Assembly (NCBI GenBank): GCA_002269645.1
Contig: NIVC01002676.1
Location: 86,228 to 150,227 of the forward strand
Reading direction: 5' to 3'
DNA from: Macrostomum lignano
Taxonomy: Eukaryota
Length of the DNA: 64,000 bases
Of the stretch, positions 17,589-64,000 are shown piece after piece (the first letter of the stretch is position 1; each line of letters starts with the position of its first letter). The notes beneath the pieces were generated by a model that saw nothing but the letters and a program-made list of their open reading frames with translations, did no database searches and was not told where the DNA came from. Both the position numbers and the translations under genes were made by a program.

Positions 17589-35025
<17,437 letters not shown>

Positions 35026-35809: not shown

Positions 35810-37112
35810 ACAACAAACAAATTACGCAGCCCCGCATGTAAGATCACAGTTATAGCAGCGTGCGTCAGATGGCGCGCTGCAGAGCCTGATAGCGGACGAA
35901 GTCCGCCCCGTTGACAGTGTCGGGCGCCCCGGCGTCGCGTTGAAGGCAGTCCACGCATCGACCAAGGACTACTTAAGTACAAACGTTACTTTAGTCGTCC
36001 TTGGTATCGACGGGTTTGGGCCCTGCAAGGTGAGCAGCAGGACGTCCTAAACAGGTTGGGGGCAGTAGCCCCCGGCCCGGATCACGTGGCCCGCCAGTTG
36101 AAGTCGCCGATGGCGCTGCAGCTTGGCCCGATCGTACAGGGCCTCGGTACCGACGCTCTCGTCAGCTTGAAAGGCCGCAAGACGCAGCCCTGAGTGCGCC
36201 GAGTCCAACTGCCGCTCTAGCGTAGCCGTCAGCGTCTACGTCTCGGCGGCGTTGTATCGGCGTGGACGGATTCGACCACCGCCTGCCAAAGCCGAGCCCT
36301 CTGGCGGTCGAGCAGCGCTTCGGACTGGACGACGGCCCAGATCGAATGGAAGACCGCCCAGGAAAGTCCGCTGGGATGTCCGCCGGTACAGTCAACACCT
36401 CTGTCTTCAGCGTGTTGACAACGAGACCGCGACGCTCGATGCCACCTCGACCAGCCTGTCGATGGTGCTGGGCGCCTTCAACGGACGAGGACAGGAGGGC
36501 GAGGTCTTCGGCGTAGCCCAGCACTCTCAGGCGCTTTTCGCAGTGGCGGCGACTGATACGTCTGCGCCGAAGCCTTCGTCAGCCGAGGGGAGTGCGGTCC
36601 GAAGCACCCAGTCCAGCAGCAGCACGAAGAGGGACGGCACCAGCGTGTCGCCCTGCAGAACTCCTGATGAAGTGTCGAACAGGTCAGACAGGCAGTCCGC
36701 CGTCACCACAGCAGCTCGAGTGTCGCGATACAGCGCCATGACAGCGTCGATTAGCTGCTGGGGCACCCGGTAGGCTCGAAGGACAAAGGAAAGCGCGGCT
36801 CTCAACACCGAGTCAAACGCTTTTGAAAGTCAACGAAGACAATGACTGGCGGATGCGCGCCTCCTCGATGACACGGCGGAGTGCGAGGATCTGTGTCATT
36901 ATATACCGCGTTGCGGCCAGAATCCGTTCTGCTCGTACCGCAGGTACGGGTCCAGCATTGACTGCAGAAGATAGAGCAGCAGCCGGTTTGAAAAACTTCG
37001 CGGTGCAGGACATCAATGAGATCCCGCGGGGTCTTCTTTCCGACGTTCGAGTGCCCCCAATTGCACACTCTACTGATGAGGACGCACTTTTTCCCAAATC
37101 CCGCGCTAGCAC
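35810..37112 (-). mobile_element. 5'-truncated, degenerate non-LTR retrotransposon (RTE-like RT)
   Basis: Frameshifted RT motifs RGISLMSCTAK, QILALRRVIEEAR, VIVFVDFQK(AFDSV), GVLQGDTLVPSLFVLLLD, LGYAEDLALL (YADD motif), GLVVNTLKTEVL; (TTG)n-like tail near 35810-35825. Clade assignment is from recall. Confidence 0.85.
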
Positions 37113-37617
37113 ATGGGCTCTAAACTTACTTGCCTACTAACAGTGGGCAGTGGGCATTTTTATCCTTTTTCTGCGAATTGTCATAGAATCTATACTAGAT
37201 ATAATGTCTGGCCATACTAGTAGTCATAATAACATAGGCGTAGCTTTTTGGGTCGTAAATCATCGCTTCCGAAGTTGGTCTGACAGCCACCTGCGCCTCA
37301 CTCAGTGTTGAAGCGGGCGCCAGATGGTCTGAGAGGATGCGGGCGGTAGCTTTTTTCTCATCATTTTGACAGGCCATCAAGATTTATGAGGTCAGAGCCT
37401 ATTGTTCGGATTCACTCAAGCGTGTGACAGCTTTGACAGCTATGCGTTTTACCCCTAAAAGTACCTTGGGATTAGCGATTAGCGATTTCTCTTCATTATC
37501 TTCACTTTCTATTTAATAAGAGCTTTCTAATGTATATTTTTTCATTAATTTCTGTCAATCCTACGCGAAAAGTCATAAATCATTTTGTTGCGATTTTGAG
37601 TGATTTATGGCCGCACC

Positions 37618-38979
37618 TGTCATCTTTTTACGACCCTGTGGGAACTGATAGGATCTCTCGGTCACGTGATTCTGGGTAGCAACGAGCTTAGCCAATCAGA
37701 AAATTCGGCGCTCATTTTAACAAAACGGCTCAGCCAATCAGAATCGACGTGTTCCGTTATAACAAACTGCGGTCCAGTTGGCGGCTATTTAAACCGGAGT
37801 TTTTGGCCCGCTCGGACGCAACTTCTTCTTACTTTGGCTCGGGCCCAGCGCGCAACTTCTGGTTCCCGGAGCACGACCGTCGTTTCTTGATCCCCGGATT
37901 GCAACTTCCCCCATCATCATCAAGGACGAGTCCCCCGGTCGACAGCAGCGAACATCCAGTTAAGAGCATCACCTGCTAGCTAACAGCGAAGATTGTGACA
38001 GCATCATCCCGAGTCTACAGCTGCAGAGCATCGAGCCGATTCGGTCACTGTGGAATACCTGGTCTCCGGCTGTTGAGTTTCTGATTGGTTGGGTGAGAGG
38101 CTACCTAGACTTGCTTGATTGGGTGATCCCTTTTCTGTCCCCTGTTGCAGTAGCTGAATTAGACGCACACTTTTGCTCATTTTGTTCAGTAGTGCTGTTG
38201 CTGAGGCAGGAATCATTCAATAATACTGCTAGTAGTCTAAGACTCCAATTCAATCTAAAGTGTGAAGTGAACTAAGGAGAAGGTTAAATCTAACAGTTAT
38301 CTTTGTCGGCTTTATTTCTTTGTTCGCCGATGGCTCAGATGAGTAGCTAAGCTAGTAGGCGCCGGTCACAGTGGACCAATGGCAAGGCAGTTCTCAGTCG
38401 ACCAATCTAACGAATCAGTGAGCAAAACTGCCAAAAGTGCAGAATCGGCGCCAGAGATGTACTTTGTGCACTCTAGGGTAGCCAAGCGGCTCGGGTAAAT
38501 GAATCATGCGGTCTCTGAAGTTCGAGTTAGCCTATCATCAGCGCTATGAGAGGCTAGTTGGCGCGTTGAAGGCTAAAAGTACATATCTTCGTATTTAGCA
38601 ATGTAATAGTACATGTAGCTACCCCATAGACTCGCCACCGCAAGAATCCCCTGCACAAGTCCCCTCTGTACCTGCATGGCCAACGCGATCTAGTCCCAGC
38701 AGTGTCCCTTATCATCGGCTATGACTTCGAGATTGACAGCAAAAAGACACTAGTTGGCAGGTAAGTGCAAAGCCCCTTCTAGTCGGAAGCCCGATTTCGA
38801 GAGTCCCGGTGTGGTGAGCCAGGGCGCACGGGCTGGTGGCAGCAAGTTAGTTGATCTGCGGATTAGCTAATTTCTACTTTCAAAATTCTCCCTGCTCGTC
38901 TCTCGCTGTCCCTCTCTTAGCTATAGGACCTAGACTGCTCGCCACACGATCAAGCTACCATGGGGCTGACCATCTGACA
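37618..38979 (+). mobile_element. LTR-like element (putative solo LTR)
   Basis: TGTCA...TGACA termini; two AGCCAATCAG boxes (near 37690 and 37733), TATTTAAA near 37786 and a pyrimidine-rich start region. No matching TSD found, so boundaries are uncertain. Confidence 0.4.
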
Positions 38980-40706
38980 GGAGTGGGGGGCCAGGTCTCT
39001 AATTGATTTATTTCTGAGACCTGAGGCTCGAAGGCTTCCCTAACAAGGAGCCCGAAGGTCGAAACCCATCACTACCTCGTAAAAGTAAATTCCAATAAAA
39101 AAAGCACCGAAAAGAAGATATTATTTTCATTTTTGTCTTTATTAAGTAGGAAAACTTTGCAATTTCAAAAAAAGTTATACATTTATACAAAAGCTACGAC
39201 TATATAGTAATATATTACTACATACATATGTATATGCACGTCGTGGTACTACAAAAATCGCTCGGAGTATTAATCAGCTTCTTGTTCGATCGTTGTTTGG
39301 ACTTTTGGAGCATGTAAGAGTTATATTACAGACAACCGAGACGACATATGGTTGAATGTCTATACGCTCGTAGAAGTCACATGATGGTTTTTAATCTCGA
39401 GTTTAAACTGCTGTGCAGTCGAAGGAAAGATAAATAATAGAAAGAAAAGCGACTTATTAATAGGCAACCAAAAAATGCATCACAACTTTTGAACACAGCC
39501 GATTAAGCATAAAAAATTGCTTTCGCATTGAAAAAATTGCCGACACGTCAATTCTGCAGTTTGAGTTGCTTTTTGTTTGTCTCGATATGCATATCCAAAA
39601 TTCTGTACAGAAGCAGCCGGCAAGTGGGTACAAAATTTAGCACGGAAACATTATAAAGAGAATTATAATTTATGTAGAGTCTTTGCGCAGATAGCTGTGA
39701 ATAGCTGCCTTTTCAACCTAGTCAGCTATTGCAGGAAAGCGAAAAAGCTATAACCATTCAGGAACCACTCGATCAATCCGGCCGCGCCGGACAGAGAGCC
39801 GCGGGACGCGATTCCGGCAGCTAAAAGTCATTCAGGGTGAGTCAAGGACACACCCCAGGATTAGTGCACAAATGGTTAGCGTATTAACTTGATCAAACAA
39901 TGCGTCACCTTGACTATGCAGTACCCTTGAATCGTAGGTTCGCCGCTGCTTGTTTTGCTTCTAGGAGATCGGACAATACCCTGTACAGCAGGAGCAGGAC
40001 TTAGAAGACTGGCTGTAGAAGCCATGTGAGACAGCGCGGTTATCGTTAGCACGAGTGTATTGGGGGGGGGGGGGGTAGGGGATATTTTGCGGTCGAGAAG
40101 CAATGCACAAATTCTGCGCCGCATGCCTCCAGTGCTAAATGCATAAGAGCTCCAGATCAGCTCTTGCGGCGTGGTCTGACAAGTCATTTTAGGGATTACC
40201 CTGTGCAGCGGGTAGAGATCTGGCTGCTATTGCTCACAGCTGGGTGGGGCTTCCGGCAGGAGTTCAGAGCCGGACTCTGGCGCTGATTCTCTGGCTACTC
40301 ACAGTTAAATAGTCCACTAAACCGGATACTTGGGAATATGTATAAGAGCAGCCTTTTGTTTAATTAATTAGCTGGCTAATTGGATTTAGCCACATGAATT
40401 TGAGTAGTTTTAGTTTCTCTCCTGTAGGAGAGCCTGCCCCATTAAAAATGCTATGACAACTGGAAAAATGGAGGAAATTTGTACTATTATGAAGCTACCG
40501 TAGTCAATAGATACGAGCGTAGGCTGCAGTTAAAACAAACAGTTCGTGTATCAAGACTCGGTGTAGCGCGCATTGTCTCGCGTCAGTTGCTGGGGTAAGC
40601 TCGGGGCTCTGCCGCCGTCAGTATGATAGTTGCCTATGAAGGAGCCCTCCTCTGCGTACTCACCTGAAATCCAGGTGGGAACAATTTACACGCATTTAGG
40701 CTTGAC

Positions 40707-43375
40707 TCAATTGTGCTCAAAATCAATATTTGAAAAGGTAATATTATTCTCACGATAGTCGATTTCCTCTACGCTTGCTCGAGCAGAGCTCTCCTCGGAA
40801 AGTCCGCTGACGAGGGAGAGCTTGTGCGCGTACTGGTTGGTCTCCCACATTCCATTATGACCGTCATGTTGCTGTTGATATTCGCTGAATACCTCAGCGC
40901 GAGCCTCCGCCTGGGGATTGTAGCCACGTCTGAGCTCCTGCTGGGCTACCTGGTAGGTGCGCTCGGATTCTCTAGTTGCCATGCGGATGCCGATAGCTAG
41001 GCCAACGAGCAGCAACAGCGATACAACAGTGACTGCCAAGATTTGAGCGCTAGCGCCAGCTAATTGATTCTGAGAGGCCTGAGGCTGTTTTAAGCTCAGC
41101 GCCACCGTGAGGTCCCGCAGCTGGTCATCGGCATCGAAGTCGGTGGAGTAGAAGCACAGAGAGTCCTGTCGGCAGTCGTAGGCGAGCACCGATTCCCCAG
41201 GAACCGCTGGTGGCTTTCGCATCTCCAGGCTACCGAGACTCACGGATGGCGGATAGCGCAGGTTGAATACCGGGGTGACATTCTGACGGTCAGCGAGTTC
41301 CGGACCAAGGGACGGGTGGATCCAGATGGCCACTCGGCCTCGAGAATTGTCAGTTTCCAGGGTGCAGGCCGACCTGTCTTGCAGAAGAGGGGAGCGGGGA
41401 ACAATGGTCGCGAGCCCAGCTTGAGAAAGAGTTGCAGCTCAACGCCAACTCTGTTGAGATAACTGATTATTTCATCCGATAGACGGAACTCAAAAAATGT
41501 GCCGTTGTTTTGATTGCAGCCTTGCGCGGAGCAGATGTCAGTTATATTAATGATAAAATCTTGTATTTTTAGCCTTCTGATAAATACAACGTCACTGCCA
41601 GAACTTCTGATATAGTAATCTGAGGCGCCAATCCTTTGTGATTCGGAGGAGTTCACGGAAGCTTTGCACTCAAAATGGTGACTGAAGTTGGTGCCCAGTG
41701 ACGGATTAGCTGGGGGAACGCGAATCACGTCCATTGTCAAAGTTTTACTTGAAGTCGAAGTTGAGGTCGTAGTCACGCTCATCCAACTGTCTGCACTTGA
41801 AACCTTCTGGCGAAATGCCTTATCTGTTAGACGGTCCCACTTCACCTTGTCGTTACTAACTATAGGCATGTAGAACGTTGGCTCCAATGCGACCGACTTC
41901 AATCCAGAAAACGTCACTGTACAGCTGTAGGACGGAGATCCACCCTCCATCGCGAACACCTTCTCAGGCAATAGACCGGAACTATCAGATTTTGAACTCC
42001 CGCCGTGGCCAAAATTCTGAGCGAAGTGCGGCATCGAGACCACAGTGATGTCAAACTCGAAGCGCTTTGATCCAGCCTCACATCTGTATATCCCGGAATG
42101 AGCACCGGACACCGAAGATGTAAACTCGATGATATTGCCAGTCTTTGACACTCGAATTCCATCCAACAGATTCCATTCCTCCTTCTGCGACGGCATCAAG
42201 GGTTTTCCATCGCGATAAAACCGGTAGACCTCGCTCATGTCGCTACACAGAATGGGACAGACGATGGCATTGTTGTCCATGCCGGTCATCAGAGTCACTT
42301 TACTGGCAACGTTCGGCACTACTTCGCAGTTTCGAGACACCACAGTGCTGTTACAGCCCAGGTATGAAACTTCTCCTAGAGGAATTCTTAGTCTGACGGG
42401 ACCAGTGCTCACGTAGGGCTCTGAGTCCCCAGTGACGGATGCGATGGTACAGATTCCGATTGAATACTGAGGCTTGCAGTCTTGAAAGAAAAGCTGGACC
42501 TCTCTGCTTAGGCCGCATGTTGAAAACCAGAGCTTGCCGTCTCTCAAATTCAGGTATAGCAGCTTGGCGTGGTTTTTATGCATCGAATCCATTTTTGAGT
42601 GATAATTAACGATGAGAATGGACTTGCCCAGCTGGTAGGTGATGCAAGATGACGAATCGAAGTACAAAATCATGCCCAGATTGAGCTTCGCCCTGAGAAA
42701 CTCCGGCGCTTCAGCAACCAGTCCGACGATCTCGGAGCTAAGAAAGTCGACGCTGGAAAAGGTATCATTGTTGCTGAAAATGTTGGTGGCGAATCTGGTT
42801 GCATCCCGGGTGAGAAAGCTAGGAGTGTCCGAGTTCGCATCGACTAGCGCCCGCGAAGGGACAGCCGTGATGGGATCGAGGTTCCAGATGCGCAGCGGTC
42901 TGGACACGAGAAGGCCGGTGGAAAACTCTACTAGGACGAGCAGCTCCAGCGCTCCATTGAACACGTCCTGCCGAGCAAGGCCGGACTGCCCGATGTACAG
43001 ACTGTAGTCTACGTGGCTTCTGTCGCTCAGCGATATCCTGAATGGTAGAGAATCTGGGCAGCGAGTTGCCGCAGTGACGGCCGCTCCAACCGAGCCAAGG
43101 TCGACCGTGTCCGAGACAGCGGACTTCGGACACCGGAAAATCAGCAGGCGCCGCAGCCCGACGCCCGTGTCGCCGTGCACGCGCAGCCGTACGCCGATTT
43201 TGTTGCCGGCGCGAAGCACCGCCATAGCGTCGGAGTTGCCAACCTCCCAGACGTCGTCCCAGTTAAGTAGCAGCTTGGCAGATGAGGTGCACTCGAAATA
43301 TGGCGCTCGAGACCAGCTGTTAGCTGGGTAGGCAGCGAAGCAGAGCAATGCAATCAATAGCAGGCAGTTGTTCAT
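40707..43375 (-). CDS. Ig-domain single-pass receptor, copy A; intronless; one frameshift near 41390-41405 (pseudogene or assembly error)
   Basis: Signal peptide MNNCLLLIALLCFAAYPA; Ig motif IVC...YRFYRDG...HSGIYRCEAG; ORF 41333-40707 supplies the TM (ILAVTVVSLLLLVGLAIGI) and tail. ATG-to-stop is 2669 nt, one base short of a multiple of 3. Colinear with copy B. Confidence 0.8.
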
Positions 43376-45344
43376 TTTTGACACTGAAATTGCAAACAAC
43401 TGTTACTCATTAGTAATTTGAAATAGTCGTGATTGCAACTGTATCAGACAATTTTAGGGTTAACAGGCACCTGAAATTTCATTTCATTCAATTTCAGTGA
43501 TTGTCCTAAATATAGAACTGTACATGTTTTTAATCATAATTGATTTAGCCAAATTTATAAACTTAAACATCTGATATGAGCCTGAATACAAAAGTGTTCA
43601 TCGGGACTGTAAAAATACTAATTTGTTTATAAAAAAAGACACAAATATTTTCTTATTTCATTCATAAGTTTTTAAAAGTTTTTCGAATATGAAATGACAT
43701 ATTGTTGATATTTTTTTGTATTTCTAATCAAATTATTTTTCATTATTCTAAGTTTTTGCTATTAAACTTATAACAAGTGAGTACTCTTGTACTTTAAACA
43801 AAATTAAAATCCCTACACGAAGGAAAACACATGACTTTATTGTAGCTTTATTAACAAAAATGTTAAAAACTTTCTATTAAATCATCATAAAATCTCTGTA
43901 ATAGATGAAAATTAAAAAAATGTATATAACCGTCAATTTATTTCTATTTAATGATTAATAAAATCTCTAAATAATCTGTAAATAAGGATGTAAAAACAGC
44001 AGAAAGGTATAGAGGTTGTAACTGGACTCCTTTGAAAAATAATTTTTTAAAATTCTATTAGTTTCACGCATAATACAATTTTTAATAGTTCTATCCGATT
44101 CCCGAACTCTAATTCATTAACGACTCAAATTAGTCCGAGTTGTTTTGAATTAGTTCCATTTCTTATTGCGAGAAATCTTAACAAAACGTCGTGTTATTTA
44201 CATTAGTTAAATATTTATATGAAAAACGTAGTCTGATCTACTTTATAATATTTATATCAGTTTTAGTCATATCTGCCATTTATACTTGCATACAAACACG
44301 CCCAACCAATTAATTACGGATGATCTCTGTAGAATAACGTTTCAATGGTTTTTTTGATTGATTAGAAAGTAGGAGAGTAATCACGCGCGTTCTCTTCAGC
44401 TCCTTTAGTAACTGACCCGCGTTGTAGTCAGCGGTGAACAGAGAGGACGTATTTGTATCTATGGCTTATATCTATGGTTAGAGGGAATCTCAGCCATCCT
44501 GCTGTTTACGCTGATAATTTCAAGCAGCGTCGACTTAAGTTTCCTCCTGATCCAGAATTCAGATGCAAGAGAAGTCAGTAACCTGTATTTGTGCAGCTCA
44601 TATTTTGCAATGTGGGAGCTTCATTTATGCGAAAAAATTGTAGAACTAATTATTATTTCCGTGTTATTCCACCAACTTAAACGTAGTTATAAGCTATTAA
44701 ACAGGTTTTCTATAGCTTGTCCTCTCTCTGTTTCGCTTTGGATGTAGCATCATGATATCTCAGCTGTATTTTAAACGGGGCAGTAGCATATGCAGGAATT
44801 CTGCGCCCACTCAGCCCCCAGTTGAATACGTCACTGCATGACAGCCTTAAATATATTGAAAAAAAAATCTGAAGAAAATTCCTCTTAGAAGTTGCAGAAT
44901 TCTTTTAGAATGAAAGAATGAATGAAAACTAAGAAACATTTAACATGTTGATGTTGCATCACGAAAATGGAATTTTTTTCATCAATTTCCATAAATGCTC
45001 TATTCTGCATGGTTTCATATTCTGCTACAAGACTTCTTAGACGAGGAGGAGACTGCATTATTATTCATTCGCAGCTTATTCAGCTGTCAGAAGAATGAAC
45101 ACTGAACATTGTCAGTTAGCATATCAGTTAGCACATCGCTAGTAAATACAGATTTTTGTAAATTACTTCGATGGTAAACGGCGTCATATGTCGGTTAAAT
45201 GTCGGTGTGTAATATTTAACAGCATCCATTTTCTAGCGACGCAGATAAACGTAGGAAACGTAGTGAAAATTTCTAATTAACTTAGCTGTTTTGTTGAAAC
45301 TAAGGTATAAAATTAGTTTTACGGTAAATTAAATCAATAATAAT

Positions 45345-45900
45345 AATTGATTACACCTGCCCCGATTGGGCCAGATGTGCAACCGACAGCTCAGCCGCAG
45401 CTATTGCGCGGCGCATCTGAAGGCTGCGTACGGCTGTTCAGTCCAAGGACTGGGGGGTCGCCACACACAGCCTCAATTACCTCAGTTAATGCTGGCACCC
45501 ATTCTACAGCTGGGTGAACTGAAGCAACGCAGAGTTACGAGTGTCTTGCTCAAGGACACAAATTGTTCCGAGTGGATCAGGGGCGTTGCATGGGGCAAAA
45601 GCTATGGAGGACATGCCAAATCTTTGTGCCCCCCCTACCCATCCTTGTGACCCGTTATAGAAATCAATAGTTTTGCTTCAGGCGATAAAATACAGTATAG
45701 CGCCTGCGGTGCCAATATGAGTATCTGCGGCGCCAAAATGACCGCTGACAACACTAGAACAATGTACACGTACATGTAGAATTCTTGGCTTTGTCCCCTC
45801 CCCCACCATAAAATCCATGGCGACGCCCCTGGTGTGGATCGAGAATCGAACCCCCGACCCTTCAGTCGTGAGTCCGACGCTCTAACCCGTAGGCTACAAT
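45345..45900 (-). mobile_element. tRNA-derived SINE (CORE-like), interrupted by a MITE
   Basis: Head GTAGCCTACGGGTTAGAGCG...GGTTCGATTC; TGTGTCCTTGAGCAAGACACT; (ATT)n tail; homologous to the 13.2-13.7 kb copy. Confidence 0.8.
45578..45831. mobile_element. hAT-type MITE (254 bp)
   Basis: TIR CAGGGGCGTTGC / GCGACGCCCCTG; 8-bp TSD GAGTGGAT/GTGTGGAT (7 of 8 match); SINE sequence resumes on both sides. Confidence 0.88.
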
Positions 45901-47045
45901 CCCCTCACATTAAATCAAATTATGCCAAGCCATTTCAACCATATGGCCTTGTGATGATTTATATAATCGCTTATGCACAAGCGGTCCCCTATACGTCTAT
46001 GTGGGCGCACAGGCAACTCGGGTTCAATAGACGTCTATGCAAGAATTCATAATCAGACATTTGCGATCTAATTGTGTTAGAAAACGTAGAAGAGAAGCCA
46101 ACACATAACTCGTAATAGCTCGAATAAGATTTTCAATTTTTGGCAGAATTTTCTTCGACGGTGAAATATGTTAGCATACACTCGCTTCAGGATCAATCAA
46201 CAGGAAGAAGCACCGTAGGCAGATGCTTGATATAAACACTGCTTTCCTATCGTTCATAACTTTGGAGCGTCACAATAACACGTTCGTATCTTCGCTGTTA
46301 TCTTAAAAATTAATCTTCTGCAAGCAGCTAACCGAAGCATCTGTCCGCCTGGCTTTCAAACTTTTGCTTAGTTGCATTTTCACTTAAAGCGATTTTTATC
46401 GAATCTCTGAATTTTCATAAATTCTCGACGCAAAAGCCTTAAACAGGATTCGCATTGAATTAAGAAGTTCTGCTTTAGGACAGGTTGACAAATTGCTTCG
46501 AGAAAAAACATGAATAGAGGGAGAAGGTCAGCAGGTGATTCATAGATTTGGACTTTCTGAGTTGATGGCAAAGTAATTTGAAAGGTTGCAAATGATATAG
46601 AATAATAGTGTGTAAGAACTCTTAGCGTATATCTCATAATATAGTGTGCTTTGTATTTAAGGATTTAATTATAACAGTTGCTTGCATAACAAAAGCTTAA
46701 TATAATATTTAGATCATTGGCTGAACTAGTGATATCAATATAGTAATAGTAAAAAAACTGGGTGAAATTTATGGCCAATGGGTCAATTAACAGCAAACGT
46801 ACTATATGTAACAAATTGTGCAATCCAGTATGTCTTAAATTTGGTTTCTGATTAACTTTTTATAATAAAAGTAGGAACTTTCTGAGTACATGTAGCTATT
46901 TTAATTAAACCACCAGGTCTAATCACTAAGCGATTTTCAACATCTTTGCACTGTCTCTCCTGACGTTAAGACTTGAATAAGAGTAACACTATCTACGACG
47001 CATGCACATTCTGTCTGTGCTGTTTGTCGACGTGTCATATCGCAA

Positions 47046-49676
47046 TCACGACAGCTCCAGGTCGTCCTTACTGTGAACGGACACAATGAAAGCGTTCAGC
47101 GTCTGCTTCGTGCCCACCACCGACTGCACCGGCGCGTCCTCATTGTCGGCGGCACCGGCCCTGACGTAGTCTTTGAAGGTTTCGTTCTTGGCCTCAGCTT
47201 TCGGATTGTGTCCAAGACGAATCTCCTTCTCCTCAACTAGGTAAGCCCTTTCAGGCGTCCTAGTCATGAGGTAAGCTGCCACCAGGCCAACAATCAAAGC
47301 CACACAGGCAGCGATGGCCACTCCGACAATCACACCCGAAGTACGAGTAGAAGCGACGACTCCAGGCTCGGGTAACGGTGTAACTAGAAAGGCCAGGTCA
47401 ACTCGAAGAAATTCAAGCCCATTAGATAAATCAAAGTCGGTGGAGTAAAAGCATAACTTGTCCGCCCGGCAGTCTCTTTGGCCGAGAGCGACGCTTGGAC
47501 CGCCGTAAGCACTTTTGTCGTGTCGAAGGTTTGTCAAAGCCGTTTTTGGCTGATAGCGGAAATTGTAAACGGCTGTAAGGTTTTTTCGTTTCTGCAGCTC
47601 ATTTAAAACGCTTTTCTGAGATATTGGCAAAACTTTGTAAGTCAGAGTAAAAGTTTTAGCGTCAAATCTGATGGCAGAAGCGTCTTTGACCAACAAGGAC
47701 TTCACATTTTCAAGAAGAAGATCGTCCAACATGAAGTAAGCAGAAACCTCGACCCCGACGTCCCGGAGGTAGGCTGCGGTGCTTTCCGAAAGAGCAAATT
47801 CGAACTTGGCGCCATTCGAGACGCTGCATTTCTGAACGCTACAATTGTTGTTTGGGTTTATGAGAAAACTGTCCTTCGTCAGGCGCTTTAGAAAAAAGAC
47901 ATCGGCACCCGTTTGAGTACGATACTCTGACATGCCCACCTGTGAAACAGACTCAAACTGATTAAGAGAAGCATTGCATTCAAATCGGTGACTGAAGTTG
48001 GTGCCCAGTGACGGATTAGCTGGGGGAACGCGAATCACGTCCATTGTCAAAGTTTTACTTGAAGTCGAAGTTGAGGTCGTAGTCACGCTCATCCAATTGT
48101 CTCCATTTGAAAACTTTTGACGAAATGCCTCATCTGTCAGACGGTCCCAGTTCACCTTGTCGTTACTGACCATTGGCATGTAGAACGTTGGCTCCACTGT
48201 GACCGACTTCAATCCGGAGAACATCACTGTACAGCTGTAGGACAGAGATTCGCCCTCCATCGCGAACACCTTCTCAGGCAACAGACCCGAACTTTCAGAG
48301 CTTGGAATTCCACTGGCTGCAGAAGAGTAGGTCACAGCAAAGTGCGGCATCGAGACCACAGTGACGTTGAACTCAAAGTGTTCCGATCCAGCATCACATT
48401 TGTATATCCCAGAATGAGCACTTGAGACGGAAGGTGTAAACTCGATGATGTTGCCAGTTCTCGACACCCGAATGCCATCTATGACTGTCCACTCCTCTAA
48501 TTGGGACGCATAAAGTGGGTTGCCGTCTCTGAAAAATCGATACATCTGGCTTTTATCGCTGCACAGAATGGGACAGACGAGGGCGGTGTTGTCCATGCCG
48601 GCCATTATGGTCAAAGTTTTCTTAGCATTTGGTGCCACTTTGCAGGCTGTAGACAATATGGGACATCCGGAGTAATGGACTTTGTCAATTGAATAGCGCT
48701 GATCTGCTGCCTGAATTTTTAGGTAGGGTTCAGATTCTCCGGAGAACGAAATGATGGTGCAGATTCCAACGGTATACTGCGGCTTCTTTTCATGATAAAA
48801 TGAGGTAATCTCCTGTTTTAAACCGCAAGCAGCAAAGTCTAAATAGCCACTCTCTACATCCAGGTGCATTATTTTTTGAAGCTTTTGATGTCGCAAGTCA
48901 AATTTGGAGTAGTAGCTTGTAAACAACGTGGCCTTTCCCAGTTGATTGTGCAAGCAGGACCCTGCATCAAAGTACAGGCTTGAGCCTAGTGTTATTTTGC
49001 TCCTGACGAACTGCGGTGCATTTTTGACAAAGCTTGAAATTGATGGTTCGATGAAGGGTACAGCTGGAAACTGGTCGTCAAGTGGGCTGGAATAGTTCAA
49101 CCTGGTCATCAGCTCAATCGCGGCAGGGGTAAGAAATTTTAAATCCAATGCCCCCATCTTTCCAACGCTAAATGCACCAAGTGGGTCAAAGTTGTACAGA
49201 AAGAGCGGATTGGACTGGATTGCCCCGCCAGACCATTCGACCCGCACAACGAGTTTCACTCTCCTGCTAGCCACCTGGGTATAGTGCACCTCTGAGGCTT
49301 TCATCTTCAGTTGAAAATGGTTCTCAGAGTTGCCCGCCTGTACAGTGAATGGAATGGTATTCGGGCATCGATGTTCGGGAGACAAGCTCGATTGGAGAGT
49401 GTCCATGTCAATCATTTGGGCCTGGGATTGCGGGCACTCGTAAATTAGAACTCTTTTTAGGCCGCTTCCGCCGCGATCGCCGCTCACGGACACCTGAATG
49501 TTGATGTGCTTGTCTTCGGTAAGAATCGACAGCATGTTGGACGATCCGACCTCCCAGGTGTCGCTCCAGGAAAGCAACACCTTGCTGGACGGTGAGAACT
49601 GGAACCGCGGCATCTGCTGGGTGGCGAGCGTGCAACCGGAGACCAGCGCCAGGAAGAATAGCGTCAAGAAGGCCAT
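47046..49676 (-). CDS. Ig-domain single-pass receptor, copy B; intact and intronless; 876 aa from the Met at 49676
   Basis: 2.6-kb ORF; signal peptide MAFLTLFFLALVSGCTLA; I-set-like Ig (LVC...RFFRDG...HSGIYKCDAG), second Ig-like region (GESLSYSC...RFEC); several N-x-S/T sequons; TM VIVGVAIAACVALIVGLVAAYLM; tail of about 65 aa. Confidence 0.9.
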   Translation of the reverse strand: MAFLTLFFLALVSGCTLATQQMPRFQFSPSSKVLLSWSDTWEVGSSNMLSILTEDKHINIQVSVSGDRGGSGLKRVLIYECPQSQAQMIDMDTLQSSLSPEHRCPNTIPFTVQAGNSENHFQLKMKASEVHYTQVASRRVKLVVRVEWSGGAIQSNPLFLYNFDPLGAFSVGKMGALDLKFLTPAAIELMTRLNYSSPLDDQFPAVPFIEPSISSFVKNAPQFVRSKITLGSSLYFDAGSCLHNQLGKATLFTSYYSKFDLRHQKLQKIMHLDVESGYLDFAACGLKQEITSFYHEKKPQYTVGICTIISFSGESEPYLKIQAADQRYSIDKVHYSGCPILSTACKVAPNAKKTLTIMAGMDNTALVCPILCSDKSQMYRFFRDGNPLYASQLEEWTVIDGIRVSRTGNIIEFTPSVSSAHSGIYKCDAGSEHFEFNVTVVSMPHFAVTYSSAASGIPSSESSGLLPEKVFAMEGESLSYSCTVMFSGLKSVTVEPTFYMPMVSNDKVNWDRLTDEAFRQKFSNGDNWMSVTTTSTSTSSKTLTMDVIRVPPANPSLGTNFSHRFECNASLNQFESVSQVGMSEYRTQTGADVFFLKRLTKDSFLINPNNNCSVQKCSVSNGAKFEFALSESTAAYLRDVGVEVSAYFMLDDLLLENVKSLLVKDASAIRFDAKTFTLTYKVLPISQKSVLNELQKRKNLTAVYNFRYQPKTALTNLRHDKSAYGGPSVALGQRDCRADKLCFYSTDFDLSNGLEFLRVDLAFLVTPLPEPGVVASTRTSGVIVGVAIAACVALIVGLVAAYLMTRTPERAYLVEEKEIRLGHNPKAEAKNETFKDYVRAGAADNEDAPVQSVVGTKQTLNAFIVSVHSKDDLELS

Positions 49677-51124
49677 GATCTGGACATTGGACGGACATGA
49701 GTGAAATATGCATTGAAATATTGGCACCCTATAATTCGATTATTGCAAGCTTAACAGAAAGCCAATTTTACTAAGATTTGCTAATTCGAGTTTTTACTGA
49801 ACTCAATTTTAGTTTGGCGATTAAATAACTCTATGCTTTATGCTCGCATTCATATCAATCACATCATACGCACTAGATTCATCTAATCTCTAACATGCAA
49901 ACTAAAGATACATAAGGTACGATTTTCGCGTGCAAAGGAAATTAATATTTGAACAATAAATAAAAGTTTTTACTTACAAAAATATGGTAAACTCGAGGTA
50001 GTTCCAGAAGCAACTGTAACAAGCAGAAGATTGATTTATGTTGCCACCGTTGCTGCAACTACGCAAATAAGGTCTAGCTATACAGTAGGGTAGTGTATTT
50101 GAGGCGAATAATTTGAATTCGTGCTGATGCATATTTTATATTAAAGATTAACCGTTTTTTGAATTAAGTAAGAAAAATAATGTAGAAAAAATTACTAAAT
50201 AAAAGTTCACTTATTTTGTGTAAAGTTCGGTTTTATTTTTATAAAATTTGTTATACTCCTACTAGCAAGAAGTTTCTAGAAACGAATAAAAAAATTTTAC
50301 GTTTTGACAGATGCATGCGAGTCAGGGTATAGTTATAGGAATCGTGCACCCAGTTCATTCATCTGAGATCCTTTATTTCCCCCAAATTTATTCTAATTTA
50401 GCTATTTGACGAAGTCATGATAAAAATCGAAGTCCAGAGTAAAGCATTATAGAAGTCTGGCTCGAACATGTACAATACTAAAGCAGAAGAATCTTTCATT
50501 TTCAATAAAAATAATTTATTACAGATCGGATATAACTATGGATAAATTATTTCTACAACTTAATCGAAGAGATCCTTGTGGATGTACCAATGTAGGCAAA
50601 ATGAAGTATGTAACATGCTTTTAAAAATCTGCATGTAAGATACTCCATGGAATCGTTGATTCTCTTTGCTCTTACAGCTTTCAGACCTGGGCTCTAACGA
50701 ACTCGCTCGAGCAACAGGTGATGAATGAATAACTGTCACCCGTAGCGCAGCACTCCAATACAAAAACCGGCTTGCAATCAATATCTATGTTTGTCGCTAG
50801 CAAATGAGTATTTTCGATTTGCATCGATAGCATTCGGCTGACCTATAACGTCATAATCCACCTGTGTAATGTACAGGCATCAGCAGACCGTCAGCATACC
50901 TTCTTTAGGTATGATAGTTTGTCTGATAAAAAATTTGCATTTGAGTATTTCTCAATGTGTGTAGCATCTAACTAGAAATTGGTGCGAATTTTCGATTAAA
51001 AACCAGTAGGTTCGATACAAACGAGTACAAAGTCAGCAACTTAATTATCAGGACTACACAAAGTGTGATGTGTCAAATTTTGCTGTTAATTAAACCTATA
51101 GTAAAGCCGGAGTGGATAAAACGG

Positions 51125-61693: not shown

Positions 61694-64000
61694 TCACGAC
61701 AGCTCTAGGTAAATGGACGCAATGGAAGCGTTCAGCATCTGCTTTGTGCCCATCTTCTCTTTCTCCTCAACTTGGTAAGCCCTTTCAGGCGTCCTGGTCA
61801 TGAGGTAAGCTGCCACCAGGCCAACAATCAAAGCCACACTGGCAGCGATGGCCACTCTGACAATCACACCGAAGTACGAGTAGAAGCGACTCCAGGCTCG
61901 GGTAATGGTGTATCTAGAAAGGCCAGGTCAACTCGAAGAAATTCAAGCCCATTAGATAAATCAAAGTCGGTGGAGTAAAAGCATAACTTGTCCGCCCGGC
62001 AGTCTCTTTGGCCGAGAGCGACGCTTGGACTGCCGTAAGCACTTTTGTTGTGTCGAAGGTTTGTCAAAGCCGTTTTTGGCTGATAGCGGAAATTGTAAAC
62101 GGCTGTAAGGTTTTTTCGTTTCTGCAGCTCATTCAAAACGCCTTCCTGAGATATTGGCAAAACTTTGTAAGTCAGAGTAAAAGTTTTAGCGTCAAATCTG
62201 ATGGCAGAAGCGTCTTTCACAAACAAGGACTTCACATTTTCAAGAAGAAGATCGTCCAACATGAAGTAAGCAGAAACCTCGACCCCGACGTCCCGGAGGT
62301 AGGCTGCGGTGCTTTCCGAAAGAGCAAATTCGAACTTGGCGCCATTCGAGACGCTGCATTTCTGAACGCTACAATTGTTGTTTGGGTTTATGAGAAAACT
62401 GTCCTTCGTCAGGCGATTTAGAAAAAAGACATCGGCACCCGTTTGATTACGATACTCTGACATGCCCACCTGTGAAACAGACTCAAACTGATTAAGAGAA
62501 GCATTGCATTCAAATCGATGACTGAAGTTGGTGCCCAGTGACGGATTAGCTGGGGGAACGCGAATCACGTCCATTGTCAAAGTTTTACTTGAAGTCGAAG
62601 TTGAGGTCGTAGTCACGCTCATCCAACTGTCTCCATTTGAAAACTTTTGACGAAATGCCTCATCTGTCAGACGGTCCCAGTTCACCTTGCCGTTACTGAC
62701 CATTGGCATGTAGAACGTTGGCTCCACTGTGACCGACTTCAATCCAGAGAACATCACTGTACAGCTGTAGAACAGAGATTCGCCCTCCATCGCGAACACC
62801 TTCTCAGGCAACAGACCCGAACTTTCAGAGCTTGGAATTCCACTGGCTGCAGAAGAGTAGGTCACAGCAAAGTGCGGCATCGAGACCACAGTGACGTTGA
62901 ACTCAAAAAAGTGTTCCGATCCAGCATCACATTTGTATATCCCGGAATGAGCACTTGAGACGGAAGGTGTAAACTCGATGATGTTGCCAGTTCTCGACAC
63001 CCGAATGCCATCTATGACTGTCCACTCCTCTAATTGGGACGCATAAAGTGGGTTGCCGTCTCTGAAAAATTGATACGTCTGGCTTTTATCGCTGCACAGA
63101 ATGGGACAGACGAGGGCGGTGTTGTCCATGCCGGCCATTATGGTCAAAGTTTTCTTAGCATTTGGTGCCACTTTGCAGGCTGTAGACCATATGGGACATC
63201 CGGAGTAATGGACTTTGTCAATTGAATAGCGCTGATCTGCTGCCTGAATTTTTAAGTAGGGTTCAGATTCTCCTGAGAACGAAATGATGGTGCAGATTCC
63301 AATGGTATACTGCGGCTTCTTTTCATAATAAAATGAGGTAATCTCCTGTTTTAAACCGCAAGCAGCAAAGTCTAAATAGCCGCTCTCTACATCCAGGTGC
63401 ATTATTTTTTGAAGCTTTTGATGTCGCAAGTCAAATTTGGAGTAGTAGCTTGTAAACAGCGTGGCCTTTCCCAGTTGATTGTGCAAGCAGGAGCCTGCAT
63501 CAAAGTACAGGCTTGAGCCTAGTGTTATTTTGCTCCTGACGAACTGCGGTGCATTTTTGACAAAGCTTGAAATTGATGGTTCGATGAAGGGTACAGCTGG
63601 AAACTGGTCGTCAAGTGGGCTGGAATAGTTCAACCTGGTCATCAGCTCAATCGCGGCAGGGGTAAGAAATTTTAAATCCAATGCTCCCATCTTTCCAACG
63701 CTAAATGCGCCAAGTGGGTCAAAGTTGTACAGAAAGAGCGGATTGGACTGGATTGCCCCGCCAGACCATTCGACCCGCACAACGAGTTTCACTCTCCTGC
63801 TAGCCACCTGGGTATAGTGCACCTCTGAGGCTTTCATCTTCAGTTGAAAATGGTTTTCGGAGTTGCCCGCCTGTACAGTGAATGAATGGTATTCGGGCAT
63901 CGATGTTCGGAGACAAGCTCGATTGGAGAGTGTCCATGTCAATCATTTGGGCCTGGGATTGCGGGCACTCGTAAATTAGAACTCTTTTTAGGCCACTTTC
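61694..64000 (-). CDS. Ig-domain receptor, copy C; 5' end beyond the window; near-identical to B in the ectodomain; three 1-nt deletions as assembled
   Basis: About 97-98% amino-acid identity to B over about 675 aa (by eye). Single-base losses near 63884, 63910 and 61870, all in short G/C runs. The TM and a shortened tail are still present in the shifted frame and end at the homologous stop (61694-61696). Confidence 0.8.

What the first reader, a model, noticed from the sequence alone, without database searches (positions are those of the whole stretch)
40707..47320. Cytoplasmic tails of A and B resemble the L1CAM/neuroglian juxtamembrane motif but lack FIGQY
Seen: the tails are otherwise diverged but share TR..ER.Y.V...E.R.G.NP.AEA..E.F..Y (A: TYQVAQQELRRGYNPQAEARAEVFSEY; B: AYLVEEKEIRLGHNPKAEAKNETFKDY). 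From recall, L1-family tails read KYSVKDKE...ETFGEY (L1) and KYDVHDRE...G...FHEY (neuroglian), a FERM-binding region. A continues with an acidic S-rich ...SVEEIDY stretch like SDDSLADY, but neither copy has the ankyrin-binding FIGQY. Inference: highly derived L1-family offshoots, or chimeras of a novel ectodomain with an L1-type tail.
Basis: partly seen in the sequence, partly recalled or inferred. Interest (0 to 1): 0.7.

Follow-up and report, generated by a model that had tools for sequence, protein, structure and literature searches.

The report
Flatworm membrane proteins with L1-type tails

Summary
The window is Macrostomum lignano DNA. It holds three tandem minus-strand paralogues: A, B and a decayed copy C.

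The L1 resemblance is real homology, not chance:
- B's tail alone hits one Pfam family, Bravo_FIGEY (19.4 bits, below the 23.8 cut-off).
- Ten shuffled tails give no such hit.
- An exhaustive profile search found M. lignano paralogues with the same ectodomain. Their tails pass Bravo_FIGEY at 37-61 bits and contain GSFIGGY or GSFIGEY.
- B's tail matches one of these tails end to end (BLASTP 2e-22).

"Neither copy has FIGQY" is wrong for A. A 90-nt GT-AG phase-1 intron follows ...EEIDY and joins a short exon encoding EYAEEGSFIGNY. The spliced tail scores 24.5 bits. Four paralogue gene models have a terminal intron at the same place. B truly lacks the motif, because its tail stops about 42 residues early.

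A's frameshift is a one-base difference in a C-run. A 99.4% identical copy in another assembly is intact.

The ectodomain has only one weak sequence-level Ig match and no FN3. An AlphaFold model (pLDDT 79) best matches contactin, DCC and axonin-1 Ig arrays.

Verdict: a lineage-specific, derived L1-type family. Paralogues are already auto-labelled in UniProt, but the family is undescribed in the literature searched.

The parts
40754..43375 (-). Gene A, exon 1: signal peptide (MNNCLLL...), about 780-aa ectodomain, membrane helix and most of the tail, up to ...SVEEIDY
   Evidence: ORFs; coordinates checked. The 99.4% identical copy in L001 (16979-19648) reads through as one 889-aa ORF.
41396..41399 (-). 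C-run where window A loses its frame: CCCC here, CCCCC in the other assembly
   Evidence: This is the only indel between window A and L001 A. With the extra C the ORF is intact.
40977..41051 (-). A transmembrane helix, SAQILAVTVVSLLLLVGLAIGIRMA
40878..40976 (-). A juxtamembrane tail segment, TRESERTYQVAQQELRRGYNPQAEARAEVFSEY. It corresponds to the FERM-binding part of L1/neuroglian tails.
   Evidence: Drosophila neuroglian sequence from PMC4384726 primers
40664..40753 (-). A terminal intron: 90 nt, phase 1, GTGAGA...TTTCAG.
   Evidence: P0005, P0012, P0003 and P0006 gene models have a terminal intron at the equivalent place; phase 1 was read only for P0005 and for the P0011 donor.
40551..40663 (-). 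A exon 2: (R)EYAEEGSFIGNYHTDGGRAPSLPQQLTRDNARYTES*. The ankyrin-type motif GSFIGNY lies at 40646-40626.
   Evidence: The spliced tail scores Bravo_FIGEY 24.5 bits over profile positions 6-84 of 86. BLASTP against the P0002 tail gives 2e-20.
47046..49676 (-). Gene B: intact single-exon CDS of 876 aa from MAFLTLFF, stop codon included in the coordinates
   Evidence: It is 95% identical to M. lignano protein P0001. dN/dS against the L001 copy is 0.35.
47265..47336 (-). B transmembrane helix, GVIVGVAIAACVALIVGLVAAYLM
   Evidence: the AlphaFold model has a helix at mature residues 762-786
47049..47264 (-). B cytoplasmic tail (72 aa): a truncated L1-type domain. The juxtamembrane part is at 47264-47166. 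It ends at ...DDLELS, where paralogues continue DDKELDQY...GSFIGGY.
   Evidence: No FIG.Y-like coding sequence lies downstream.
61694..64000 (-). Copy C: a B-like copy that runs off the window end. It has a frameshift before the membrane helix and an internal deletion in the tail (TRTPERAYQVEEKEKMGTKQ...), so it is a likely pseudogene.

Best explanation
A and B are tandem paralogues of a family seen so far almost only in Macrostomum lignano. The family consists of single-pass type I membrane glycoproteins. Each has a signal peptide, an ectodomain of about 750 aa built largely of Ig-like beta-sandwich domains, one membrane helix, and a cytoplasmic domain that is a true homologue of the L1/neuroglian tail (Pfam Bravo_FIGEY).

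A encodes the whole tail. The juxtamembrane segment and the acidic ...EEIDY segment are on the large exon. The ankyrin-type motif GSFIGNY is on a short last exon after a 90-nt intron. B keeps only the first two thirds, namely the juxtamembrane region and the serine-rich middle. It has lost the last ~42 residues with the motif. C is decaying.

Inferred mechanism: the ectodomain mediates cell-cell or cell-matrix recognition. The juxtamembrane Y-x-V-x-x-(K/Q)-E-(I/L)-x-x-G segment recruits FERM/ERM proteins and so couples to actin, as shown for neuroglian. The FIGxY motif recruits ankyrin and so couples to spectrin. B would then be an ankyrin-uncoupled variant. Retention of A's in-frame, stop-containing intron would produce the same kind of variant from A.

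Shown: the homology, the gene structure and the loss in B. Inferred: binding partners, adhesion function and isoform switching.
For: Species and family. B is 95% identical to an M. lignano protein. The window is 97-99% identical to GCA_002269645.1 contig NIVC01001317.1. An exhaustive profile search of 1.84 billion proteins found 11 representatives; ten are from M. lignano (UniRef and/or NCBI records) and one comes from an ENA contig.

Tail homology.
- Bravo_FIGEY scores are 60.9, 56.7, 45.5 and 37.4 bits in P0003, P0005, P0011 and P0002 (cut-off 23.8).
- A's spliced tail scores 24.5 bits.
- B's tail scores 19.4 bits as its only Pfam hit.
- None of 10 shuffled tails hit the family.
- BLASTP gives B against P0002 2e-22 and A against P0002 2e-20, both colinear.
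- The only PDB sequence hit of a paralogue tail is the neurofascin ankyrin-binding peptide in 7xce, but it is weak and non-significant (E 2, 12.6 bits): FNEDGSFIGQY against FTEDGSFIGEY.

Intron. P0005, P0012, P0003 and P0006 gene models all have a terminal intron at the same place. In P0005, P0012 and P0003 the last exon starts just before GSFIG.

Functionality. The A copy in L001 is intact. dN/dS is about 0.35. The juxtamembrane segment is among the best conserved in the family.

L1 tail logic. In neuroglian the juxtamembrane FERM domain and FIGQY act independently (PMC4384726).

Ectodomain. The AlphaFold model has pLDDT 79 and pTM 0.71. The best Foldseek matches are contactin-2 and contactin-1 Ig1-6, and the Ig1-4 horseshoes of DCC and axonin-1 (E 1e-16 to 1e-11; TM 0.55-0.56 normalised to the target). 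Extended Robo1 Ig1-4 scores only 0.26.
Against: - B's tail is below the Pfam gathering score, and A's passes by only 0.7 bits and only with the inferred splice. An alternative acceptor 12 nt downstream gives 13.7 bits.
- No RNA evidence for the splice was available.
- In this window A carries a frameshift.
- At sequence level the ectodomain shows one sub-threshold Ig_2 hit and no FN3. No PDB sequence match is significant.
- The fold matches have 8-12% identity and low query-normalised TM. Multi-Ig queries tend to hit any long Ig array.
- The membrane-proximal ~190 residues look alpha/beta, not Ig or FN3.
- No binding, expression or localisation data exist. No paper found in these searches mentions these genes.
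Confidence: 0.8

Rival explanations
1. Chimera by domain capture. The ectodomain has an origin unrelated to L1. The membrane-helix and tail-coding part of an L1/neuroglian gene, together with its last intron, was joined to it in a Macrostomum ancestor. The tail would still work as an L1 tail, but the family would not be an L1-family offshoot.
For: No sequence-level Ig1-6 or FN3 signal is present. One Ig_2 hit scores 15-20 bits against a cut-off of 27. Profile against PDB sequences finds nothing significant. The ectodomain was found in no clearly different species among 1.84 billion representatives. The membrane-proximal third of the model is alpha/beta rather than FN3. Distant relatives P0007-P0010 have the N-terminal domains but no L1-type tail.
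Against: The best fold matches are the closest structural relatives of L1 ectodomains: contactin Ig1-6 and the Ig1-4 horseshoes of DCC, axonin-1 and sidekick, with TM 0.48-0.56 against 0.26 for non-horseshoe Robo1. Rapid divergence could erase the sequence signal.
Confidence: 0.35
2. Chance or convergent short motifs. The tails resemble L1 only because charged, acidic juxtamembrane tails look alike.
For: B's tail is sub-threshold in Pfam. A's unspliced tail gives no hit. Membrane-helix-plus-basic-stretch regions also give weak Syndecan hits and a weak Trop2 hit.
Against: Paralogues score 37-61 bits over the full 86-position profile, including F.EDGSFIG.Y. A and B are colinear with those tails at 2e-20 to 2e-22. 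None of 10 shuffles hit. A terminal intron lies at the equivalent place just before the motif exon.
Confidence: 0.03
3. A and B are decaying, non-functional duplicates, so the truncated tail of B and the frameshift in A are simply pseudogene damage.
For: Copy C is clearly damaged. A has a frameshift in this window. B lacks the C-terminal third of the domain. The family is highly duplicated.
Against: B is a complete 876-codon ORF, and dN/dS is 0.35 between copies. A is intact in the 99.4% identical L001 copy; the difference is one base in a homopolymer, a common assembly error. B's truncation is shared by its L001 copy and by C, so it is old yet the ORF persists. Two other clades (P0004, P0006) also lack the motif in intact gene models.
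Confidence: 0.1

Closest known systems
L1-family cell adhesion molecules (L1CAM, neurofascin, NrCAM, CHL1; Drosophila neuroglian; C. elegans SAX-7)
   Same: Type I topology. The cytoplasmic domain is homologous (Pfam Bravo_FIGEY), with the juxtamembrane Y.V..(K/R)E(L/I)..G segment, an acidic ...DxY segment and F.E(D/E)GSFIGxY. The motif lies on a terminal exon; from recall, neuroglian isoforms also differ by alternative last exons that each carry FIGQY, and PMC4384726 calls the ankyrin domains 'isoform-specific'. The ectodomain model best matches Ig arrays of the L1/contactin type.
   Different: There are no recognisable FN3 repeats and no sequence-recognisable Ig1-6; only one weak Ig hit. The ectodomain is about 750 aa rather than about 1,100. 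The coding region is almost intronless. The family is expanded into many tandem and dispersed copies in one flatworm. Several members (B, the P0004 clade, the P0006 clade) lack the ankyrin motif.
C. elegans LAD-2, a non-canonical L1CAM (PMC2213605)
   Same: It is a precedent for an L1-type molecule that has lost the ankyrin-binding motif, as B has.
   Different: It is the mirror image. LAD-2 keeps the canonical 6 Ig + 5 FN3 ectodomain and has a 40-aa tail with no L1 similarity. B keeps the L1-type juxtamembrane tail and has a divergent ectodomain.
Contactins / axonin-1 / DCC (Ig1-4 horseshoe receptors)
   Same: These are the best structural matches of the predicted ectodomain. Distant family members P0007-P0010 end in a short hydrophobic C-terminus without a tail, which resembles GPI-anchored contactins.
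   Different: Sequence identity in the structural alignments is 8-12%. Contactins have no membrane helix or L1-type tail. The horseshoe arrangement here is inferred from TM-scores only.
UniProt automatic annotation of M. lignano paralogues ('Bravo_FIGEY domain-containing protein', 'Neurofascin/L1/NrCAM C-terminal domain-containing protein')
   Same: These are the same family. The tail domain of paralogues P0002, P0003 and P0005 is already machine-labelled.
   Different: B's orthologue P0001 is an unlabelled 'hypothetical protein' with no Pfam domain. No A-like protein was returned by the searches run with B or with the A+B profile. No paper discusses the family.

Membership tests
L1 family of IgCAMs | Cytoplasmic domain matching Pfam PF13882 Bravo_FIGEY above the gathering score (23.8 bits) | tested here: met
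   Met for the family and for A, not for B. Paralogues score 37.4-60.9 bits. A's spliced tail scores 24.5 bits, a marginal pass that depends on the inferred splice. B's tail scores 19.4 bits, below the cut-off, but is colinear with the P0002 tail at 2e-22.
L1 family of IgCAMs | Ankyrin-binding FIGQY-type motif (SFIGxY) near the C-terminus | tested here: inconclusive
   A: present as GSFIGNY at 40646-40626 after a 90-nt intron; the splice is not confirmed by RNA. B and C: absent from the ORF and from all downstream DNA. So it is met for A and not met for B.
L1 family of IgCAMs | Conserved juxtamembrane segment that binds FERM/ERM proteins | not testable with these tools
The sequence similarity is present. 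B has YLVEEKEIRLG and A has YQVAQQELRRG. Pfam profile positions 6-59 are matched. Binding itself needs an experiment.
L1 family of IgCAMs | Six N-terminal Ig domains recognisable by sequence | tested here: not met
   There is only one sub-threshold Ig_2/Ig_3 hit: 15-20 bits against cut-offs of 27-30, at B ORF residues 379-449. Profile against PDB sequences gives only E 0.25 to one Ig domain.
L1 family of IgCAMs | Three to five fibronectin type III repeats between the Ig domains and the membrane | tested here: not met
   No fn3 hit appears in any scan, even at E<=10 on isolated segments. The membrane-proximal part of the model is mixed alpha/beta.
L1 family of IgCAMs | Ig1-4 horseshoe fold of the N-terminal domains | tested here: inconclusive
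   Foldseek target-normalised TM is 0.55-0.56 to the DCC and axonin-1 Ig1-4 horseshoes. It is 0.26-0.30 to Robo1 Ig1-4. The model coordinates could not be inspected.
L1 family of IgCAMs | Type I single-pass topology: signal peptide, one membrane helix, C-terminal cytoplasmic tail | tested here: met
   A hydrophobic N-terminus and one 24-25-aa hydrophobic helix followed by a basic stretch are seen. The model has a helix at 762-786.

The most novel reading that the evidence does not exclude
A flatworm lineage has rebuilt the L1-type receptor. It kept the cytoskeleton-coupling tail but remodelled the ectodomain beyond sequence recognition and dropped the FN3 stalk. It then expanded the gene into a multi-clade repertoire with three kinds of member: ankyrin-coupled ones (A, P0002, P0003, P0005), ankyrin-uncoupled ones (B, P0004, P0006), and tail-less, possibly GPI-anchored ones (P0007-P0010). 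The ankyrin motif sits on a terminal micro-exon behind an in-frame, stop-containing intron. Splicing or intron retention could therefore switch cytoskeletal anchoring on or off. Such a diversified, fast-evolving repertoire could be a lineage-specific cell-recognition system, for example for tissue, gamete or self/non-self recognition.
Probability: 0.25. Interest if true: 0.6.

Novelty: new variant of a known kind. Interest (0 to 1): 0.45.

Why it matters
L1-type adhesion molecules are defined by a fixed pairing: a 6 Ig + FN3 ectodomain with a tail that binds ERM proteins and ankyrin. This family keeps the tail and has a very different ectodomain. Within one gene cluster it offers natural variants with and without the ankyrin motif.

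Three consequences follow:
- It gives a natural experiment on what each part of the L1 tail does. Macrostomum lignano allows RNAi and transgenesis, so the experiment is feasible.
- It shows how far an IgCAM ectodomain can drift, or be swapped, while the cytoskeletal coupling module is retained.
- On the practical side, ORF-only reading missed a 113-nt terminal exon, and a homopolymer error mimicked a pseudogene.

Tried and rejected
- The first AlphaFold run used only the 5 near-identical or fragmentary rows. It gave pLDDT 35.7 and was discarded.
- A word-indexed homologue search with B found only its own orthologue.
- The same tool given the tail alignment found nothing at all, not even family members.
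- The same tool given P0005 found only P0005 itself and a fused gene model. As a result, no independent set of real L1-family tails could be fetched, and no tail or Ig phylogeny was possible.
- PDB sequence searches of B's tail gave no hit. The family profile gave nothing significant, only weak Ig and Trop2/TM matches.
- Pfam Syndecan, DUF6249, ASFV_J13L and similar hits on membrane-helix-plus-basic stretches were judged to be transmembrane-composition matches. This holds even for Syndecan at 28.4 bits in P0002, because the hit covers the helix.
- I considered a small intron as the explanation for A's frame break. I rejected it because no sequence is missing relative to B, and the intact L001 copy differs by a single C.
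- An alternative acceptor for A's intron (AG at 40653-40652) is also in frame but gives a poorer domain match, 13.7 bits.
- B has a GTAAGG donor-like site near its 3' end, but no downstream motif exon exists.
- The contig of P0011 (L003, ENA, 39% GC, rich in retroelements) carries only the last ~140-190 residues and no motif exon. Its organism could not be identified.
- Literature searches for the gene identifiers and for Bravo_FIGEY in Macrostomum found nothing relevant. One search timed out.
Full report
**What is there**

The window is genomic DNA of the free-living flatworm Macrostomum lignano. The long ORF B (49676-47046, minus strand) is 95% identical to the NCBI protein 'hypothetical protein BOX15_Mlig003394g1'. 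Window 35058-58434 aligns at 97-99% with contig NIVC01001317.1 of assembly GCA_002269645.1.

Three paralogous genes lie in tandem on the minus strand:
- A, at 43375-40551.
- B, at 49676-47046.
- C, a B-like copy from 61694 to beyond the window end. It has a frameshift before the membrane helix and a deletion inside its tail, so it is a likely pseudogene.

A and B are about 48-51% identical in protein sequence.

**Check of the observation**

Seventeen of 33 juxtamembrane residues are identical, and the rest of the tails diverge.

The resemblance to L1-type tails is not chance:
- B's isolated tail hits one Pfam family only, Bravo_FIGEY. The score is 19.4 bits with E 0.0024 over 24,736 models, across profile positions 7-59 of 86, below the gathering score of 23.8.
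- Ten composition-preserving shuffles of the A and B tails give no Bravo_FIGEY hit even at E<=10.
- A real neuroglian sequence, recovered by translating published primers (PMC4384726), reads ...RRNRGGK / DVHDRELANGRRDYPEEGGF. B has YLVEEKEIRLG and A has YQVAQQELRRG against (Y)DVHDRELANG. That stretch is the 11-residue FERM-interaction region deleted in the paper.

**The decisive evidence: paralogues**

I ran an exhaustive HMMER profile search, built from A, B, C and P0001, against 1.84 billion representative proteins. It found 11 proteins. Ten are M. lignano proteins. One (P0011) comes from an ENA contig of unknown organism.

Five clades (P0002-P0006) share the whole architecture with A and B. 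Their Bravo_FIGEY results are:

| Protein | Score (bits) | Profile coverage | Motif |
|---|---|---|---|
| P0003 | 60.9 | essentially the whole profile | FAEDGSFIGGY |
| P0005 | 56.7 | essentially the whole profile | FTEDGSFIGEY |
| P0011 | 45.5 | positions 2-71 of 86 | none in this fragment |
| P0002 | 37.4 | essentially the whole profile | FGEQGSFIGGY |

The gathering score is 23.8 bits. The only PDB sequence hit of the P0005 tail is the neurofascin ankyrin-binding peptide fused to ankyrin-G in 7xce (FNEDGSFIGQY). That hit is weak and non-significant, with E 2 and 12.6 bits.

B's 72-residue tail is colinear with the first 72 residues of the P0002 tail (56% identity, BLASTP 2e-22). It ends at DDLEL-S-stop, where P0002 continues DDKELDQYKDDIDFKEFGEQGSFIGGY. 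B's tail is therefore a C-terminally truncated L1-type domain.

Across the six full-length clades the juxtamembrane segment is among the most conserved parts of the protein. Its mean pairwise identity is about 0.5, against 0.36 overall.

**Correction: A does have the motif**

A six-frame scan of the window for [GS][ST]F[IV]G.Y finds one hit, GSFIGNY at 40646-40626. It lies about 60 nt (20 codons) downstream of A's apparent stop codon and in the same frame.

The sequence between is a 90-nt intron (40753-40664) with a GTGAGA donor directly after ...EEIDY and a TTTCAG acceptor, in phase 1. Splicing gives ...SVEEIDY-R-EYAEEGSFIGNYHTDGGRAPSLPQQLTRDNARYTES*. This spliced tail scores 24.5 bits on Bravo_FIGEY over profile positions 6-84 of 86, just above the gathering score. 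It aligns with the P0002 tail at 2e-20 through the motif.

The intron is a family feature:
- P0005 is one 878-codon exon, an intron of roughly 85-90 nt in phase 1 (GTGAGT...TTTAG), and a last exon GDFTEDGSFIGEY....
- P0012, of the P0002 clade, has a ~120-nt intron before FGEQGSFIGGY.
- P0003 has a 3.1-kb intron before its last exon, which begins GRFAEDGSFIGGY.
- P0006 has a 115-nt intron at the same place, but its motif has degenerated to DNSSFMYES.
- P0011 has a phase-1 GTGAGT donor at the same place.

I had no RNA data, so the splice in A is an inference. An alternative acceptor 12 nt downstream is also in frame but fits the domain less well, at 13.7 bits.

B and C have no such exon. Neither strict nor loose motif scans find anything between B's stop codon and gene A, or downstream of C.

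**State of the genes**

In this window A's reading frame breaks near 41400. The 99.4% identical A copy in L001 differs by one indel only: CCCCC instead of CCCC at window 41396-41399. It reads as an intact 889-codon exon, followed by the same intron and motif exon. The break is therefore an assembly error or an allelic difference in a homopolymer, not evidence of long decay.

dN/dS between the window and L001 copies is 0.35 for B and about 0.3-0.36 for A, the latter on few differences. This indicates moderate purifying selection.

**The ectodomain**

At sequence level only one Ig-like domain is visible, and it is sub-threshold: Ig_2 at 15-20 bits against a cut-off of 27, at B ORF residues 379-449. 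No FN3 hit appears, even when the six predicted segments are scanned separately. A family profile finds no significant PDB sequence.

With a 20-sequence family alignment, AlphaFold2 gives a usable model with mean pLDDT 79 and pTM 0.71. The first run, with 5 sequences, was useless.

Foldseek results against the PDB:
- Contactin-2 Ig1-6, E 1.7e-16.
- Contactin-1 Ig domains, E 6.5e-16.
- DCC Ig1-4 and axonin-1/TAG-1 Ig1-4 horseshoes, E 1e-13 to 1e-11, target-normalised TM 0.53-0.56.
- Sidekick Ig1-4, TM 0.48.
- Extended Robo1 Ig1-4, TM only 0.26-0.30.

I read this as four N-terminal Ig-like beta-sandwich domains, some with helical insertions, possibly folded back as a horseshoe. A membrane-proximal alpha/beta region of about 190 residues follows and is not FN3-like. 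I could not inspect the coordinates, and multi-Ig queries attract all long Ig arrays. The horseshoe and the specific kinship with L1/contactin ectodomains therefore remain suggestive only.

**Interpretation**

The tails of A and B are genuine L1-type cytoplasmic domains. Fold evidence leans toward a much-diverged IgCAM ectodomain, meaning whole-gene descent with loss of the FN3 stalk. Capture of the tail by an unrelated ectodomain is not excluded.

By analogy with neuroglian, where the juxtamembrane FERM-interaction region and FIGQY act independently (PMC4384726), I infer three things:
- All members can couple to ERM/FERM proteins.
- Only A and the P0002, P0003 and P0005 clades can couple to ankyrin.
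- B, like the P0004 and P0006 clades, is an ankyrin-uncoupled variant.

The in-frame intron of A contains a stop codon. Its retention would give a B-like short tail from A. This is speculation.

C. elegans LAD-2 is the mirror-image precedent. It has a canonical L1 ectodomain and a divergent 40-aa tail without the ankyrin motif (PMC2213605).

**Novelty**

UniProt already machine-labels the paralogues as 'Bravo_FIGEY domain-containing' or 'Neurofascin/L1/NrCAM C-terminal domain-containing'. B's orthologue carries no label. No A-like protein was returned by the searches run with B or with the A+B profile. No paper mentions the family.

It fails two defining features of the L1 family at sequence level: six recognisable Ig domains and the FN3 repeats. 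I therefore file it as a new variant of a known kind, not as a plain member. Interest is moderate.

Noticed in passing
window 41658-42289 (A) against 47968-48605 (B): A and B are only about 45-55% identical in DNA over most of their length. A central patch (B residues ~345-565, covering the Ig-like domain and the following domain) is 70-94% identical, with runs of identical protein such as SVTTTSTSTSSKTLTMDVIRVPPANPSLGTNFSH. This looks like gene conversion between the tandem paralogues.
   Followed up: partly
window 61694-64000: A third, B-like copy (C) runs off the window end. It is 97% identical to B in DNA, has a frameshift just before the membrane helix, and has lost the middle of the tail (EIRLGHNP...SVV) by deletion. 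It is a likely pseudogene.
   Followed up: partly
window 41396-41399: The single-base homopolymer difference (CCCC against CCCCC in GCA_002269645.1) breaks gene A only in this window's sequence. It may be an assembly error.
   Followed up: yes
window 37073-39072, and around 49860-50473: The window carries about 2 kb that is absent from the otherwise 97-99% identical contig NIVC01001317.1, plus smaller rearranged stretches upstream of B. These are probably insertions or structural differences between haplotypes or subgenomes.
   Followed up: no
window 7500-33300: There is a dense succession of minisatellite arrays with periods of 4-62 nt and up to 250 copies. Examples are 17686-18886 (19-mer, 62 copies), 25946-27273 (20-mer, 66 copies) and 29285-30636 (14-mer, 97 copies). 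GC skew is strong at 26-34 kb. Long 'ORFs' there are repeat artefacts that give spurious Pfam hits.
   Followed up: no
window 20498-21238 (minus strand): The ORF's C-terminal 93 residues match the N-terminal part of the protein-tyrosine phosphatase domain (Pfam Y_phosphatase, 80.9 bits, profile positions 14-103 of 234). It is probably one exon of a PTP gene.
   Followed up: no
proteins P0007-P0010 (other M. lignano loci): These distant family members match only the N-terminal ~450-600 residues. They end in a short hydrophobic C-terminus with no cytoplasmic tail, which may indicate GPI anchoring. That would parallel the L1/contactin split.
   Followed up: no
L001:10001-13303 (gene model of P0001): The deposited gene model for B's orthologue starts with a 36-residue extension (ARPYLCSCSNGG...). 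It derives from an upstream ORF joined over an intron. The signal peptide starts at MAFLALFF, so the extension is probably an annotation artefact.
   Followed up: partly
L003:5038-5595 (ENA ERZ25070786, contig ctg142120l): This is the only family hit without an M. lignano source label. It is a 185-aa ORF with the membrane-proximal ectodomain stub, the membrane helix and an L1-type tail (Bravo_FIGEY 45.5 bits). It sits in a 39% GC contig full of reverse-transcriptase fragments. No upstream ectodomain and no motif exon were found. The organism is unknown.
   Followed up: partly
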